From Octopus sinensis (Eukaryota), in NCBI RefSeq assembly GCF_006345805.1, contig NW_021833593.1, positions 1 to 57,608 of the forward strand: DNA of 57,608 bases, given 5' to 3'. The translations under genes and the position numbers were made by a program. Shown here piece by piece: positions 44,204 to 49,826 of this stretch (position 1 is the stretch's first letter; every line of letters begins with the position of its first letter). Under the pieces are notes generated by a model. It was not told the origin of the DNA. It ran no database searches and saw only the letters and a list, made by a program, of their open reading frames with translations.

Positions 44204-46342
44204 CTAATCTTTGCTCGTCTTCGGGATGTTACTGAAAACATATTCAAAGAATTTCTGAATCTTGCGAGCCAAGGCCTTTTCTTCATTTTTCTCCCGGTCA
44301 GCAGGAGCCGGTTTCTGGCATAGCAACCTTCATCATTGCCAGGACATTGGTCAGAAGTGAGCTGGAGTCGTTCCGACTGTTGATTCTTCCTGCGCTGGTC
44401 ATTGTCAGATGGTGGACCCAATGGGTCGTCAGGAAGAAGGTGTGACTGAACAGAAGAGTGGTCAGCTGGTCAGGTTTCTCTCGTTGTCTGAATCTCGCTG
44501 CTGGTTGTGACTGGTGGAATTGGTCTGGTGTTGTCAGAGTCACGGTCAGTCAGACATAGTGGCCACACGGGCATTTACAGCCTGACCAACTTCATTATCT
44601 CATGCGGACAGTCTGTGTCACTGTCAACTGGTCATCTTGACCTCTTCATTCTGACCAACTCCCTTGGGTCATTGTCACACAGCCATACTAGGTCATTGTC
44701 AACTGGTCATCTTGACCTCTCCATTCTGACCAACTCCTTTGGATCATTGTCACACTGCCATACTAGGTCATTGTCAACTGGTCATCTTGACCTCTCCATT
44801 CTGACCAACTCCCTTGGGTCATTGTCACACTGCCATACTAGGTCATTGTCAACTGGTCATCTTCACCTCTCCGTTCTGACCAACTTCCTTGGGTCATTGT
44901 CACACTGCCATACTAGGTCATTGTCAACTGGTTGTCTTGACCTCCCCATTCTGACCAACTTCCTTGGGTCATTGTCACACTGCCATACTAGGTCATTGTC
45001 AACTGGTCATCTTGACCTCTCCGTTCTGGCCAACTCCCTTGGGTCATTGTCACATAGCAACACTAGGCCACTGTCAGCATGCTTTGTCCACATCCTTGGG
45101 TCACTGTCATGCCATACCATTAGGTCTCTGTCAACTGGTCAGCTGAGCCAATCCAGCCATGCCTGTTCCATTGGGTCACTGTCAGGTGGAAAGCGTCAGT
45201 CGACAGCAATTTATGTTACTGTGGCCCAAATTCTGCGAGGTTCACAAATGAGTGGCGTTTCTGCAATTATTCGTTGTGGATCCGTTGAGCACCTGTGATG
45301 TCACATTGGTCAGGCTGGTGTTGAGGAGCTCGGGTCAACATCACGCGACTCTACACTTAGTCACGTTGTTATTGCTGTTGTTGTTGCTGCTGCTGCTGAT
45401 GTTGATGCATAGCGGCGTCTGTGACAATGTTGAGCTGGTTTCGTATTCTGTCTGAGACTGGTCCTTACCACCATCTTCGTCGTTGCAGTTTTTACTGTTG
45501 TCCACAGGTGTTGGGTAGGTAACGTTATTGCCATTAGAATTGGCGTGGATGCTGCGATGTCTTTCACAATAATGCTGCCGTTGTTTGTAGACGTCATGTT
45601 CTTACCGCCATCAACATCATTGTTGCTGCTGGCGGTGGTAGTAGTAGAGGTGGTGGCCATAGATGTAGCCTCACCTTTGACGTCGTTGTTATTATCGACG
45701 ACAATATTATTGCTATTGCGAACCTGTTGCCGCTGGTTGTCGGAAGGATCTGCAATGACATCGGGCAGCTGTGCACTGGTTTCGTTTCTGCATATGCAAT
45801 ACATATGTTTGTAGACCGAGTGCAACAAAGCACGGAGTTTACAGTTACATGGCACCGGGAGACTCAGAACAATAGTTTCTTCCCCATCAAATATCGGTCT
45901 TCTTTCCAACGTGGCATTCTTGTTTTTGGGGGCAGAGTTGACACCGATATTCTTCACAGTGGTTGCGTCGACGTCTGTCTTAGTGCGGTTGCGGTGATGG
46001 TCACGGCTTTGGACAATGCCTTGGAGACGGTCTCGACGACGGTCCTTGACGCGATGGTTACGGTTGAGCTGGCCGAGAGCCGGGCTCGGCTGGAGAAGGA
46101 AGCGTCACTGTCACGTCTGAATGATTTTGTAGCGGTCCTGCTCCAGCTGGGGTGGACATTGTCAAAACGAGTCCGTTGCTGCCTTTTGCTGCTGCTGCTT
46201 CCGTTGAAGCTTCCCCTCCTCTCCTTTCTCCTCTTCTTCACCTTGATGATGATGAGGCGGAGGATAATGTTGATGGCGATGAGGATGATGGGGGTAATTG
46301 CTGTTATAATGCAACTGTTGCTGCTGATAGTGGTGAAGGGGG

Positions 46343-46385
<43 letters not shown>

Positions 46386-46942
46386 GAGGATGCTGATTGA
46401 CAAGCTGGGAGTTGTGCTGGCCATGCGGTTGGTAAGGAGGCGAGTGTCGGTTGCCTTTGCCGCGGCTGCCCTTCTTTCGGGGTTTCTGCTCGGTGTGGCA
46501 AGAACCGGTGTTGTTACCGGGCACGAAATAGCACACTAACTTCTTGAATGGCTTAGCAGAATGAGACGTCGACGACGAAGACGATGACGATGACAATGAC
46601 GACGACGACAATGTCGATGAGAAGGAAGAAGCACCGACGGAAGAAGAAAACGGAAACAGTAACGAACGATGCTTAATGAGCCAATTACTCAAGGTGGACG
46701 TTTTTGGATTGTGCCTGTACACGTATTTCTTTTGCGGTTTCTTCTTCGGCAGGGACATTGCCGACACCGTGTACATGCGCCGCACTCAGGCCCGGAACTT
46801 CGATGTCTGCTGGTAGTTAAACAGGTTGCCTAGCATACAGTTACACAAATTGAAGTAGTACGACATGCAAATACCTTTGTGGACGTTGAGCGTGGAAACG
46901 GGAGCCTGCGATTGGTTGAAGCGAAACGTCTGACGACCGCAC
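44204..46942 (-). CDS. SELENOP: SELENOP last exon: end of N-domain, His-rich linker, Sec-rich C-terminal domain
   Basis: Acceptor CTCTCTTACCTTTACACAG; begins CGRQTFRF...; 4 TGA in the first frame (46786, 46162, 46111, 46105), then a frame break in 45364-45601, then 44 TGA with no TAA/TAG until TAG 44206-44204. Confidence 0.85.
44603..45184 (-). repeat. Coding 75-bp (25-codon) tandem repeat, consensus UQUPKGVGQNGEVKMTSUQUPSMAV
   Basis: Six near-identical units at 45052-44603 plus two diverged units upstream. Confidence 0.92.
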
Positions 46943-47000
46943 CTGTGTAAAGGTAAGAGAGGCGGCGCTTAGCAGTGCGAGAAATAATAAGAATCTGTTT

Positions 47001-48085
47001 CTTTGCTACCCACAAGGGGCTAAACACAGAGGGGACAAACAAGGACAGACAAACGGATTAAGTCGATTATATCGACCCCAGTGCGTAACTGGTACTTATT
47101 TAATCGACCCCGAAAGGATGAAAGACAAAGTCGACCTCGGCGGAATTTGAACTCAGAACGTAATGGCAGACGAAATACCTATTTCTTTACTACCCACAAG
47201 GGGCTAAACACAGAGAGGACAAACAAGGACAGACAAAGGGCTTAAGTCGATTACATCGACCCCAGTGCGTGACTGGTACTTTTTTAATCGACCCCGAAAG
47301 AATGAAAGGCAAAGTCGACCTCGGCGGCATTTGAACGCAGAACGTAACGGCAGACGAAATACCTATTTCTTTACTACCCACAAGGGACAAACAAGGACAG
47401 ACAAACGGATTAAGTCGATTATATCGACCCCAGTGCGTGACTGGTACTTTTTTAATCGACCCCGAAAGGATGAAAGGCAAAGTCGACCTTGGCGGAATTT
47501 GAACTCGGAACATAACGACAGACGAAATACGGCTACGCATTTCGCCCGGTGTGCTAACGTTTCTGCCAGCTCGAAGAATCGTAGAAGCAGCAGCAATAAT
47601 GGTAATAACAGCAACAACAACAAGTCCTTTCTATTGTAGGCAGAAGGCCTGAAATTTGGAGGAAGGGATTCAAGTCGATAACATCGACCCCCGGTGCATA
47701 ACCGGTATTTATTTAATCGACCCCGAAAGGATGAAAGGCAAAGTTGACCTTGGTGGAATTTGAACTCAGAATGCAGCGATGGGGGAAATACTGCTAAGCA
47801 CTTCATCGGGTGTGCTAACAATTCTGCCAGCTCGCCACCTTAATAATAATATATCTTTACTGCCCACAAGGGGCTAAATACAGAGGGGACAAACAAGGAC
47901 AGACAAAGGGATTAAGTCGATTACATCGACCCCAGTGCGTGACTGGTACTTATTTAATCGACCCCGAAAGGATGAAAGGCAAAGTCGACCTCAGCGGAAT
48001 TTGAACTCGGAACGTAACGACAGACGAAATACGGCTACACATTTCGCCCGGCGTGCTAACGATTCCGCCAGCTCACCGCCTTTAA
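47001..48085 (-). mobile_element. SINE family B tandem arrays in a SELENOP intron
   Basis: Same units as 5969-6745 (47001-47573, 47630-47840, 47855-48085). Confidence 0.85.
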
Positions 48086-48362
48086 TAATAGTAATAGTAA
48101 TTAATGACCTGCCCATGTATACAGTGAGTTTCTTTGCCCTAGGTGTCAGGAAGACACTTGGCAAGAAATGGAAACATTGGTTTGTCTACATCCTTGTAGC
48201 TTAGCAGTTCAGCAAAATATCAATAGTGTAAGTACCAAGCTCACAAAAACAATAATTACAGGAGTCGATTTGTTTGACTAAACCCTTCAAGGCAGTGCCC
48301 CAGCATGGCCACAGTCCAATGACTGAAACAAGGTAAAAGAGGAAAGGTAAAAAGTAAATTAC

Positions 48363-48563
48363 CTATCGTAGAGGATGATGTCATTGTTGGAGCCTTTTAA
48401 CTTCTTCCATATCCTCCGATGTAGAGAATCTTGGTAAACAGGGATGCTTGTCTCCTTTCTCAACTGATGAAGTCTACGTTTTGCTGATGGAAAGAAAGAA
48501 TTGACGATGCGGAACTTGACAAACTCCCGATTGGTTTGCAGCATATGATGGATCTTCTCCAGC
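48363..48563 (-). CDS. SELENOP: SELENOP second coding exon (LEKIHHMLQ...IPVYQDSLHRRIWKKLKGSNNDIILYDR)
   Basis: TTTCACCAG / GTAAAT, 201 bp, phase 2 to 2; IPVYQ and W..L.G...D...YDR|CGR match the SelP N-domain as I recall it from human SELENOP. Confidence 0.93.
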
Positions 48564-48646
48564 CTGGTGAAATGGAACATTGGCCAAGGGTTAACAATAA
48601 ATATTTTAGATATCTATCTGGGTGTATATAGTATGTGTGGTTACAC

Positions 48647-48683: not shown

Positions 48684-48689
48684 CACACC

Positions 48690-49073
48690 TACGAGAGTGA
48701 GTCAAAAAGTAATGCCATTTTGTTTAGGACAGGTATAATTACCAACACAGGAACATGTATCATACATCAAAAGAAAGCTGGTCCTCTGTGGATCACATCC
48801 CTACTTCTAAACATAGTCACCGTTTCTCTCAATAGCAATGTTCCACCTTCGAATGAGAGCATGTATCCCTGCCCCGTAAAATTCTGTTGACTGTTCTTTG
48901 AGCCACTTCTTCACTACAGTTTTCACTTCCTCGTCAATGGAATAATTTAGCGCCTTCGGACTATCATCTCTTTGACCCCATGAAAGAGGGTTTGAGAGGC
49001 AAACATTATTCCAGTGACGTGGAAGTGAAAACTTCTGTAGGAATTGACGTTACTACCGTTTTTAACCCCAGGA

Positions 49074-49106
<33 letters not shown>

Positions 49107-49288
49107 ACACACTTACACACACACACACACTTACACACACACACACACACACTCACACACACACACACACACTACACACACACACACTTACCACACACAC
49201 ACACACACTTACACACACACACACACTCACACACACACTTACACACACACACACTCGCACACACACACATACACACACACACACACTT

Positions 49289-49320
<32 letters not shown>

Positions 49321-49345
49321 ACATACACACACATACTCATCATAA
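48690..49345 (-). mobile_element. Mariner-derived composite unit plus long (CA)n
   Basis: Same unit as 6883-7750. Confidence 0.8.
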
Positions 49346-49536
49346 GAATTCATATACTGCAAGAAAACATGAAAACAATTTGTTTTAGAATGCAGGATCT
49401 TGAAGCAGACAAAGCTACAAATGATGTTTTCTTATGACACAATATTTGCATATATTAGGTTGGAAACTAAGCAACAACAACAACAACAACAGTAACAGCA
49501 ACAACAACAACAACAATACAATCAAGGTTTACTTAC

Positions 49537-49826
49537 TCAACGATGTTCTTCAATCATGGTTTTCAGTTGGCACTGAAGAGGCCAACGACGGTCGGATGAC
49601 CTGCAGTGTTGGCCATGGGGTTAGCTAGGGCCCCATTGCTCCAGTTGGGCATAACCTTGCAGTTGCCATTACCCCGGTTCAGCCTTGCCGGTGACACGCC
49701 TGTCACGGCAACAAGCAAGGCGAGTGTCAGTGTGATGGCCACATTTGAGATGCCTCCTCTCCTTCCTCCTCCTCCTCCTCCTTCCACTCCTCCAGCTGCT
49801 TTATTGCTGCAGCCTGGCCTTTTCAT
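49537..49826 (-). CDS. SELENOP: SELENOP first coding exon (MKRPG...VAITLTLALLVAVTGVSPA...CKVMPNW...NPMANTAGHPTVVGLFSAN-U-KP-U-LKNIV)
   Basis: Acceptor TTTCAG upstream of 49845, CAAAATG start at 49826, GTAAGT donor; C...P.W....PM......TVV.L..A.U aligns to the SelP N-terminus; TGA at 49565-49563 and 49556-49554. Confidence 0.9.

What the first reader, a model, noticed from the sequence alone, without database searches (positions are those of the whole stretch)
44204..49826. Hidden selenoprotein P with about 50 in-frame UGA codons
Seen: three minus-strand exons (49826-49537, 48563-48363, 46942-44204) join through GT-AG sites in matching phase. In 45601-44207 one frame runs 465 codons with 44 TGA and no TAA or TAG; six more TGA lie upstream. 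With the frame break bridged by one base this gives ~1076 aa and 50 TGA by hand count. Known: SELENOP has a signal peptide, a thioredoxin-like N-domain (IPVYQ, YDRCGR), a His-rich linker and a Sec-rich tail; human has 10 Sec. From memory, very Sec-rich forms are reported in bivalves. Inference: this is an extreme, likely mis-annotated cephalopod selenium carrier that standard gene finders would stop at the first UGA. Whether it is already described I cannot tell.
Basis: partly seen in the sequence, partly recalled or inferred. Interest (0 to 1): 0.97.

Follow-up and report, generated by a model that had tools for sequence, protein, structure and literature searches.

The report
Selenoprotein P gene with 50 UGAs
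This is a three-exon selenoprotein P gene whose tail carries about 50 in-frame UGA (selenocysteine) codons; that is real but ordinary for a mollusc, because similar Sec-rich forms are already described, and one unexplained frame break and unconfirmed SECIS signals remain.

Summary
Three minus-strand exons (49826-49537, 48563-48363, 46942-44204) join through GT-AG sites in phase. The spliced product matches Pfam SelP_N in one stretch across both junctions (E 1.6e-22, 80.5 bits against a cut-off of 23.2). The two exon-1 TGAs form UKPU, which aligns with the CxxC of a thioredoxin-like structure. A His-rich linker follows. The frame 45601-44207 has 465 codons, 44 TGA and no TAA or TAG (0 of 5000 shuffles reach 44 TGA; 0.12% lack TAA/TAG). 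A 75-nt (25-codon) tandem array of 6.1 indel-free copies carries 24 of them, and copy differences favour third codon positions.

Three things are unresolved:
- **Frame break:** it lies in 45601-45363. There is no slippery heptamer. A one-base assembly indel is my leading guess, and a 74-nt intron is possible.
- **SECIS:** Rfam finds none. A hand scan gives one canonical-form candidate (core 42776-42730) and one weak one.
- **Orthologues:** none could be retrieved.

Multi-Sec SELENOP with modular tails is already described across Metazoa (132 UGAs in bivalves, 162 in lamprey). This is a new member of a known kind. Its cephalopod origin and its annotation status were not tested.

The parts
49537..49826 (-). 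Coding exon 1. It starts at ATG 49826, has a long n-region and then a hydrophobic core (VAITLTLALLVAVTGV, about 49748-49695), followed by the start of the SelP_N domain. A ttcag| acceptor lies about 19 nt upstream of the ATG, so a 5' non-coding exon probably lies further upstream.
   Evidence: the SelP_N match starts at aa 54. The signal peptide is inferred from the sequence and was not run through a predictor.
49554..49565 (-). UKPU: two in-frame TGAs (49565-49563 and 49556-49554) at the thioredoxin-fold CxxC position.
   Evidence: One search gives the coordinates. FSAN-CKPC-LKNI aligns with FATN-CKPC-LREL of thioredoxin-like protein 2m72_A, E 0.0024.
48564..49536 (-). Intron 1 (GTAAGT...caccag), containing a (GT)n microsatellite.
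48363..48563 (-). Coding exon 2, the central part of SelP_N, including IPVYQ.
46943..48362 (-). Intron 2 (GTAATT...tacacag), holding five copies of a SINE-like unit of about 190 nt (47027-48074).
45602..46942 (-). Exon 3, entering frame. It holds the end of SelP_N (to about 46795), a Ser-rich stretch, the His-rich linker (46440-46243), four TGAs (46788, 46164, 46113, 46107; motifs FUQCPP and TUQUR), and then 248 codons with no stop of any kind.
45363..45601 (-). Frame-break zone, where both frames are open. The tail frame is one base behind the entering frame. Homopolymers here are AAA 45586, AAA 45564, CCC 45515 and AAAAA 45493. There is no X XXY YYZ heptamer.
44204..45601 (-). Exon 3, tail frame. 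It is the Sec-rich domain: 465 codons, 44 TGA, 15 UQU motifs and 11 Cys, a U-free last 41 aa, and stop TAG 44206-44204.
44617..45076 (-). Tandem array of a 75-nt (25-codon) module, VUQUPKGVGQNGEVKMTSUQUPSMA. It has 6.1 copies at 92% identity with no indels and 4 TGAs per unit, all conserved.
   Evidence: variable columns by codon position 4/4/10.
42672..42826 (-). Best SECIS candidate (type 2 form), with the core at 42776-42730: AUGA, 12 nt, AAAA, a 4-bp mini-helix, then GAU. Helix II is 9 of 10 bp. A 10-bp lower helix (CGUUUGUUCU/AGAACAAACG) forms when the context is folded. A C9 run flanks the 5' side and C11 sits in a large 3' internal loop.
   Evidence: MFE -43.4 kcal/mol, z -2.04. Not recognised by Rfam.
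43871..43935 (-). Weak second SECIS candidate with a GUGA core, AAA 13 nt downstream and a long apical helix. A 2-nt bulge sits next to the 3' GA, and the 5' core also reads as a splice-donor-like GGTGAGT.
   Evidence: Not recognised by Rfam. The loose scan that found it has a background of 46 hits in 115 kb.

Best explanation
This is a genuine selenoprotein P (SELENOP) gene of an invertebrate, probably an octopod mollusc. It has three coding exons on the minus strand. Shown: a SelP_N thioredoxin-like domain with a U-x-x-U redox motif, a His-rich linker, and a C-terminal domain whose only in-frame stop triplets are 44 TGAs, mostly as UQU pairs, partly generated by recent tandem duplication of a 25-codon module. 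Inferred from what is established for SELENOP: the mRNA is read through all UGAs as selenocysteine, directed by SECIS element(s) in the 3' UTR with SBP2, eEFSec and tRNA-Sec, processively once the first UGAs are passed. The product is secreted into the haemolymph. The tail serves as a selenium store and carrier, and the N-domain has redox activity. The single frame break (45601-45363) is most likely a one-base indel in this assembly. My split, which is judgement rather than a computed result, is about 55% assembly indel, 15% real lesion, 10-15% short 74-nt intron (45674-45601), and under 5% programmed frameshift.
For: Pfam SelP_N matches at E 1.6e-22 (80.5 bits, cut-off 23.2) as one stretch, aa 54-213 on profile positions 4-167, crossing both splice junctions. 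YDRCGR is rebuilt across the exon 2/3 junction, and IPVYQ is present. UKPU aligns on the CKPC of a thioredoxin-like structure. The tail has 44 TGA and no TAA/TAG in 465 codons; no shuffle reached that TGA count, and the share of shuffles with no TAA/TAG was 0.0012, or 0.006 with the repeats collapsed. The repeat period is 75 nt, which is 25 codons, with no indels, all TGAs kept, and variation biased to third positions at 4/4/10. The UQU motif also occurs in the entering frame upstream, which ties the two frames into one protein. A neighbouring 896-codon ORF has no TGA, so TGA is not generally reassigned in this genome. One canonical-form SECIS-like hairpin lies 1.4 kb downstream of the stop. 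Held literature describes the same architecture: a modular Sec-rich C-terminus, UGA as the only stop type, two SECIS elements, and even a simple-repeat region between the SECISes in lamprey.
Against: The frame break means the reading frame is not intact as assembled. No Rfam SECIS model matches anywhere in the window, even at E<=10 on the two candidate stretches. The best candidate has a large asymmetric internal loop and the second is poor. No orthologue, transcript or annotated protein could be retrieved, so conservation of the TGA/Cys columns and actual expression are untested. Pfam SelP_C does not match the tail.
Confidence: 0.8

Rival explanations
1. It is a SELENOP pseudogene or a decaying paralogue. 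On this view the frame break in 45601-45363 is a real lesion, and the Sec-rich tail is no longer translated in this lineage or haplotype.
For: A frame break is present with no slippery site to rescue it. No confirmed SECIS was found. No transcript evidence is available.
Against: It is the only lesion in about 1076 codons. There are no TAA/TAG in either frame on its own side of the break. The repeat copies differ mostly at third codon positions, carry no indels, and keep every TGA. A decaying tail with 44 TGAs would be expected to pick up other stops and indels.
Confidence: 0.13
2. Only the N-terminal thioredoxin-like part is made. Translation ends at an early UGA, and the TGA-rich stretch is untranslated 3' sequence that happens to be a minisatellite.
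For: More than half of the tail TGAs (24 of 44) come from one 75-nt tandem array. In oyster the first UGA is decoded inefficiently; this figure is from my memory of Baclaocos et al. 2019 and was not checked here.
Against: Outside the array there are still about 20 TGAs and no TAA/TAG (collapsed test). The period is a multiple of three, and the variation is codon-position biased. The UxU motif is the SELENOP tail signature and also occurs upstream of the array.
Confidence: 0.05
3. The whole pattern is a chance or composition artefact of repeat-rich non-coding DNA.
For: The window is very repeat-rich. Plus-strand frames over the same region also have long stretches free of TAA/TAG.
Against: The SelP_N hit at E 1.6e-22 needs three exons spliced in phase. 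The shuffle tests argue against chance.
Confidence: 0.01

Closest known systems
Bivalve SelenoP (Pacific oyster, 46 UGAs; up to 132 UGAs in other bivalves; Baclaocos et al. 2019, J Mol Biol 431:4381)
   Same: It comes from the same phylum, if the mollusc origin is right. It has a SelP_N domain plus a long Sec-rich C-terminus built by modular tandem expansion. The UGA count is of the same order (50 against 46). UGA is the only in-frame stop type. [quoted passage not shown]
   Different: The module sequence here (VUQUPKGVGQNGEVKMTSUQUPSMA) could not be compared with bivalve modules. Oyster has two recognised SECIS elements, while here there is one plausible and one weak candidate. This assembly carries a frame break.
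Human / vertebrate SELENOP (SELENOP1)
   Same: It has a signal-peptide-like N-terminus, a thioredoxin-like SelP_N domain with the redox motif at the same position, the IPVYQ and YDRCGR motifs, a His-rich linker, and a Sec-rich tail with UxU pairs.
   Different: Human has 10 Sec and this gene has about 50. The redox motif is UxxC in vertebrates and UxxU here. There is an insert of about 600 aa between the N-domain and the main Sec-rich block. Pfam SelP_C does not match.
Lamprey SELENOP2 (162 and 139 UGAs; PMC13134290)
   Same: [quoted passage not shown] It has a simple-sequence region between the SECIS elements (CA-rich there; (GATA)n and (TA)n here between the two candidates).
   Different: It belongs to the vertebrate SELENOP2 clade, has a CxxU motif, and has about three times more UGAs. 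Its SECIS elements and transcripts were confirmed, which is not the case here.

Membership tests
Selenoprotein P (SELENOP) | N-terminal SelP_N (PF04592) thioredoxin-like domain | tested here: met
   E 1.6e-22, 80.5 bits against a cut-off of 23.2; aa 54-213 on profile positions 4-167 of 234, as one stretch across both splice junctions.
Selenoprotein P (SELENOP) | Redox motif U/C-x-x-C/U at the thioredoxin CxxC position | tested here: met
   UKPU is encoded by TGA 49565 and TGA 49556. It aligns with CKPC of the thioredoxin-like protein 2m72_A at E 0.0024. The form is UxxU rather than the typical UxxC.
Selenoprotein P (SELENOP) | His-rich linker after the N-domain | tested here: met
   There are 15 His in 66 aa (model aa 332-397, window 46440-46243).
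Selenoprotein P (SELENOP) | C-terminal domain with multiple in-frame UGAs and no other stop type | tested here: met
   There are 44 TGA and no TAA/TAG in 465 codons; shuffle tests; 15 UQU motifs.
Selenoprotein P (SELENOP) | SECIS element(s), usually two in multi-Sec forms, in the 3' UTR | tested here: inconclusive
   Rfam gives no SECIS hit at gathering score over the window or at E<=10 on the candidate stretches. The hand scan gives one canonical-form candidate at 42776-42730 with a supporting lower helix and one weak candidate at 43935-43871. SECISearch3 was not available.
Selenoprotein P (SELENOP) | One uninterrupted reading frame from the ATG to the final stop | tested here: not met
   As assembled, a one-base frame offset lies in 45601-45363. 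Its cause is unresolved. This bears on whether this copy or assembly is intact, not on which family it belongs to.
Selenoprotein P (SELENOP) | Secretion signal peptide | not tested
   A hydrophobic core VAITLTLALLVAVTGV follows a 26-aa n-region. No signal-peptide predictor was on hand.
Selenoprotein P (SELENOP) | Orthologues keep TGA or Cys codons at the same columns | not testable with these tools
   No relatives could be retrieved. The representative search refuses spliced queries. A neighbouring ORF also has no hits, so the collections seem to lack this taxon.
Selenoprotein P (SELENOP) | Selenium actually incorporated, with full-length translation | not testable with these tools
   This needs 75Se labelling, mass spectrometry or ribosome profiling.

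The most novel reading that the evidence does not exclude
The frame break is real and is bridged during translation or by an unusual processing step. In that case a single mRNA would combine about 50 UGA-to-Sec redefinitions with a frameshift-type recoding event, served by one non-canonical SECIS that Rfam models do not recognise.
Probability: 0.03. Interest if true: 0.75.

Novelty: new member of a known kind. Interest (0 to 1): 0.3.

Why it matters
It is a clean example of a gene that ordinary gene finders truncate. If confirmed, it would add a cephalopod-type SELENOP with about 50 Sec and a UxxU redox centre to the known series (human 10, oyster 46, bivalves up to 132, lamprey 162). The young in-frame 25-codon array shows the modular expansion mechanism at work, and it predicts copy-number (and so Sec-number) polymorphism between individuals. 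It opens no new question in recoding biology. Its main value is for annotation and for comparative selenium biology.

Tried and rejected
1. Rfam SECIS detection gave no SECIS hit. I ran an E-value scan of 36000-52000, a whole-window scan at gathering score, and two small E<=10 scans. The only hits were microsatellite look-alikes of miRNA families.
2. My loose hand-made SECIS scan has a high background, 46 hits in 115 kb, so it carries no weight on its own. Only the stricter scan singles out position 42776.
3. I found no relatives. The word-indexed protein search with the N-domain gave 0 hits. The exact lookup of the 204-aa exon-3 ORF was not on record. The metagenome scan with exon 2 gave 0 confirmed hits. 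A neighbouring ORF also gave 0 hits, so these negatives say nothing about how the gene is annotated.
4. A programmed -1 frameshift is not supported: there is no X XXY YYZ heptamer in the entering frame across 45610-45340.
5. I enumerated intron explanations for the frame break. The only pair with a good donor is AAG|GTGAGG at 45674 to GGTAAG|AAC at 45600 (74 nt), and its acceptor is purine-rich, unlike the two real acceptors of this gene. I kept it as a minority option.
6. A codon-usage likelihood test for the switch point gave two near-equal optima, about 45676-45670 and about 45592-45559, and is not decisive.
7. Pfam SelP_C does not match the tail with U read as C.
8. Baclaocos et al. 2019 could not be read. 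No held paper mentions a cephalopod SELENOP.
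Full report
**Observation**

On the minus strand, exon 1 runs from ATG 49826 to a GA|GTAAGT donor at 49537. Exon 2 runs from cag|G at 48563 to AG|GTAATT at 48363. Exon 3 starts after tacacag| at 46942. The lengths are 290 and 201 nt, so the phases match. The spliced reading gives ...IVE-LEKIHHM... 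across the first junction and ...ILYD-R-CGRQ... across the second. The second junction therefore rebuilds the YDRCGR motif.

A stop-codon map shows two frames in exon 3:
- The entering frame has only TGA stops (46788, 46164, 46113, 46107, then 45363, 45312, 45303) until its first TAA at 45213.
- A second frame, one base behind, opens at 45601 and runs 465 codons to TAG 44206-44204, with 44 TGA and no TAA or TAG.

Two further TGAs lie in exon 1, at 49565 and 49556.

**Is it more than chance?**

I made 5000 dinucleotide-preserving shuffles of the tail. They average 17.4 in-frame TGA and 6.4 TAA+TAG. Only 0.12% have no TAA/TAG, and none reach 44 TGA.

The tail contains a tandem array, so I collapsed it and repeated the test. 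The collapsed tail has 28 TGA and no TAA/TAG. The share of shuffles with no TAA/TAG was 0.006, and again none reached the observed TGA count.

The array itself (44617-45076) has a 75-nt period, 6.1 copies, 92% identity and no indels. That period equals 25 codons, VUQUPKGVGQNGEVKMTSUQUPSMA. All four TGAs are kept in every copy, and the variable columns split 4/4/10 by codon position. This is what a translated repeat looks like.

A large ORF elsewhere in the window (16987-19677, 896 codons) contains no TGA at all. TGA is therefore not a general sense codon in this genome.

**Identity**

With U written as C, the spliced N-terminal part hits Pfam SelP_N at E 1.6e-22 (80.5 bits, gathering cut-off 23.2). 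The match is a single stretch, aa 54-213 on profile positions 4-167, which crosses both splice junctions and so supports the exon model.

A sequence search of the PDB aligns FSAN-CKPC-LKNI with FATN-CKPC-LREL of a thioredoxin-like protein (2m72_A, E 0.0024). The two exon-1 TGAs therefore sit exactly on the redox CxxC, giving a UxxU centre. UxxC is the usual SELENOP form, and CxxU occurs in lamprey.

Downstream of the N-domain come:
- a Ser-rich stretch;
- a His-rich linker with 15 His in 66 aa (46440-46243);
- two small Sec motifs, FUQCPP and TUQUR;
- 248 codons with no stop of any kind;
- after the frame break, the Sec-rich domain with 15 UQU motifs.

UQU occurs on both sides of the break, which ties the two frames into one protein. 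Pfam SelP_C does not match the tail.

**The frame break**

The switch must lie in 45601-45363, where both frames are open. The tail frame is one base behind the entering frame. That fits a base missing from the assembly, a -1 slip, or an intron whose length is 2 modulo 3.

- **Intron:** among GT-AG pairs of the right length class, the only one with a good donor is AAG|GTGAGG at 45674 to GGTAAG|AAC at 45600 (74 nt). Its acceptor is purine-rich, whereas both confirmed acceptors of this gene have pyrimidine tracts and CAG|G.
- **Switch point:** a codon-usage likelihood trained on the rest of the gene gives two near-equal optima, about 45592-45559 or the intron-like solution. It cannot decide between them.
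- **Indel sites:** short homopolymers (AAA 45586, AAA 45564, CCC 45515, AAAAA 45493) are plausible sites for a one-base assembly error.

I rate an assembly or individual indel as the most likely cause. That rating is inference, not a result.

**SECIS**

Sec decoding needs SECIS element(s) in the 3' UTR. Rfam finds none:
- at E<=1 over 36000-52000;
- at gathering score over the whole window;
- at E<=10 on the two candidate stretches.

My own scans give one canonical-form candidate on the minus strand. It reads AUGA at 42776, then 12 nt, AAAA, a 4-bp mini-helix, and GAU at 42732-42730, with helix II paired at 9 of 10 positions. When 161 nt are folded, this element sits at the tip of a long hairpin whose lower stem includes a perfect 10-bp helix, CGUUUGUUCU/AGAACAAACG (MFE -43.4 kcal/mol, z -2.04; 6 of 200 shuffles fold as well). 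The 3' internal loop is unusually large and holds a C11 run.

A second candidate (GUGA at 43935 to GA at 43873) has a 2-nt bulge next to the GA and no lower helix. The loose scan that found it returns 46 hits in 115 kb, so it carries little weight.

Between the two candidates lie (GATA)n and (TA)n arrays. A simple-repeat region between the two SECIS elements is also reported for lamprey SELENOP2. The SECIS requirement remains inconclusive.

**Relatives and literature**

No orthologue, transcript or annotated product could be retrieved. A neighbouring ORF also finds nothing, so the collections appear to lack this taxon. These negatives say nothing about whether the gene is annotated elsewhere.

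Cephalopod origin was not tested. It rests on my recollection that the SINE-like units in intron 2 and at 5964-6705 resemble abundant octopus SINEs.

The held literature places the finding firmly inside a known class. [quoted passage not shown] It gives a previous high of 132 UGAs in bivalves (Baclaocos et al. 2019) and 162 in lamprey, and it uses 'stops exclusively of the UGA type' as the argument for Sec decoding. The 2019 paper itself is not held. I could not check whether it already lists a cephalopod gene, and no held paper mentions one.

**Verdict**

It is a new member of a known kind rather than something extreme: 50 UGAs is close to the 46 of oyster (from memory) and well under the published maxima.

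The mechanism I commit to is standard SECIS-dependent, processive UGA-to-Sec redefinition producing a secreted selenium carrier with a UxxU redox head. The domain architecture and the UGA-only frame are shown. Secretion, Sec insertion, the SECIS elements and the intactness of the frame are inferred or open.

Scores: confidence 0.8 that this is a SELENOP gene with a translated Sec-rich tail; interest 0.3.

Noticed in passing
window 16987-19677 (+): An 896-codon stretch has no stop of any kind. It is very low in complexity, with runs of T, D, G, P, N, H and Q. It has no significant Pfam family (best hit New_glue, E 0.016, below cut-off) and no hit for its C-terminal 115 aa in the protein collection. 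It is probably a large coding exon of a neighbouring gene on the opposite strand.
   Followed up: partly
window 47027-48074, 5964-6705, about 41810-41930: The same SINE-like unit of about 185-195 nt (…GGTCGACTTTGCCTTTCATCCTTTCGGGGTCGATTAAA…) occurs as five copies in intron 2 of the SELENOP gene. It also forms a 4-copy head-to-tail array at 5964-6705, and a fragment lies downstream of the gene.
   Followed up: partly
window 42826-42672 (-): The SECIS-like hairpin is embedded in a long inverted repeat whose two arms are interrupted by C9 and C11 homopolymer runs. I do not know whether these runs are real or are assembly noise.
   Followed up: partly
window 10037-10076 (+) and 34769-34730 (-): Nearly identical 40-nt hairpins (GUGAACAUUUUUCUGGUUGAAAUACACC[A/G]AAAAAUGG) occur 25 kb apart on opposite strands. 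They are presumably copies of one dispersed repeat.
   Followed up: no
window 35618-36902: A tandem array has a 165-nt unit, 7.9 copies and 95% identity. It is the highest-scoring satellite-like array in the window.
   Followed up: no
window 11221-11922 and 14500-15070: Two further tandem arrays lie in a region of strong strand asymmetry (GC skew -0.38 and AT skew -0.31 at 14-16 kb). One has a 190/63-nt period and is rich in GTCACA palindrome-like words. The other has a 22/44-nt period, GTTCATCCCTTGTTCACC.
   Followed up: no
window 49827-49846 (-): A pyrimidine tract plus ttcag| lies about 19 nt upstream of the ATG, with no in-frame stop between them. The first coding exon is therefore probably preceded by a 5' exon that was not located. 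Oyster SelenoP is said to have a leader ORF, which I recall from memory.
   Followed up: no
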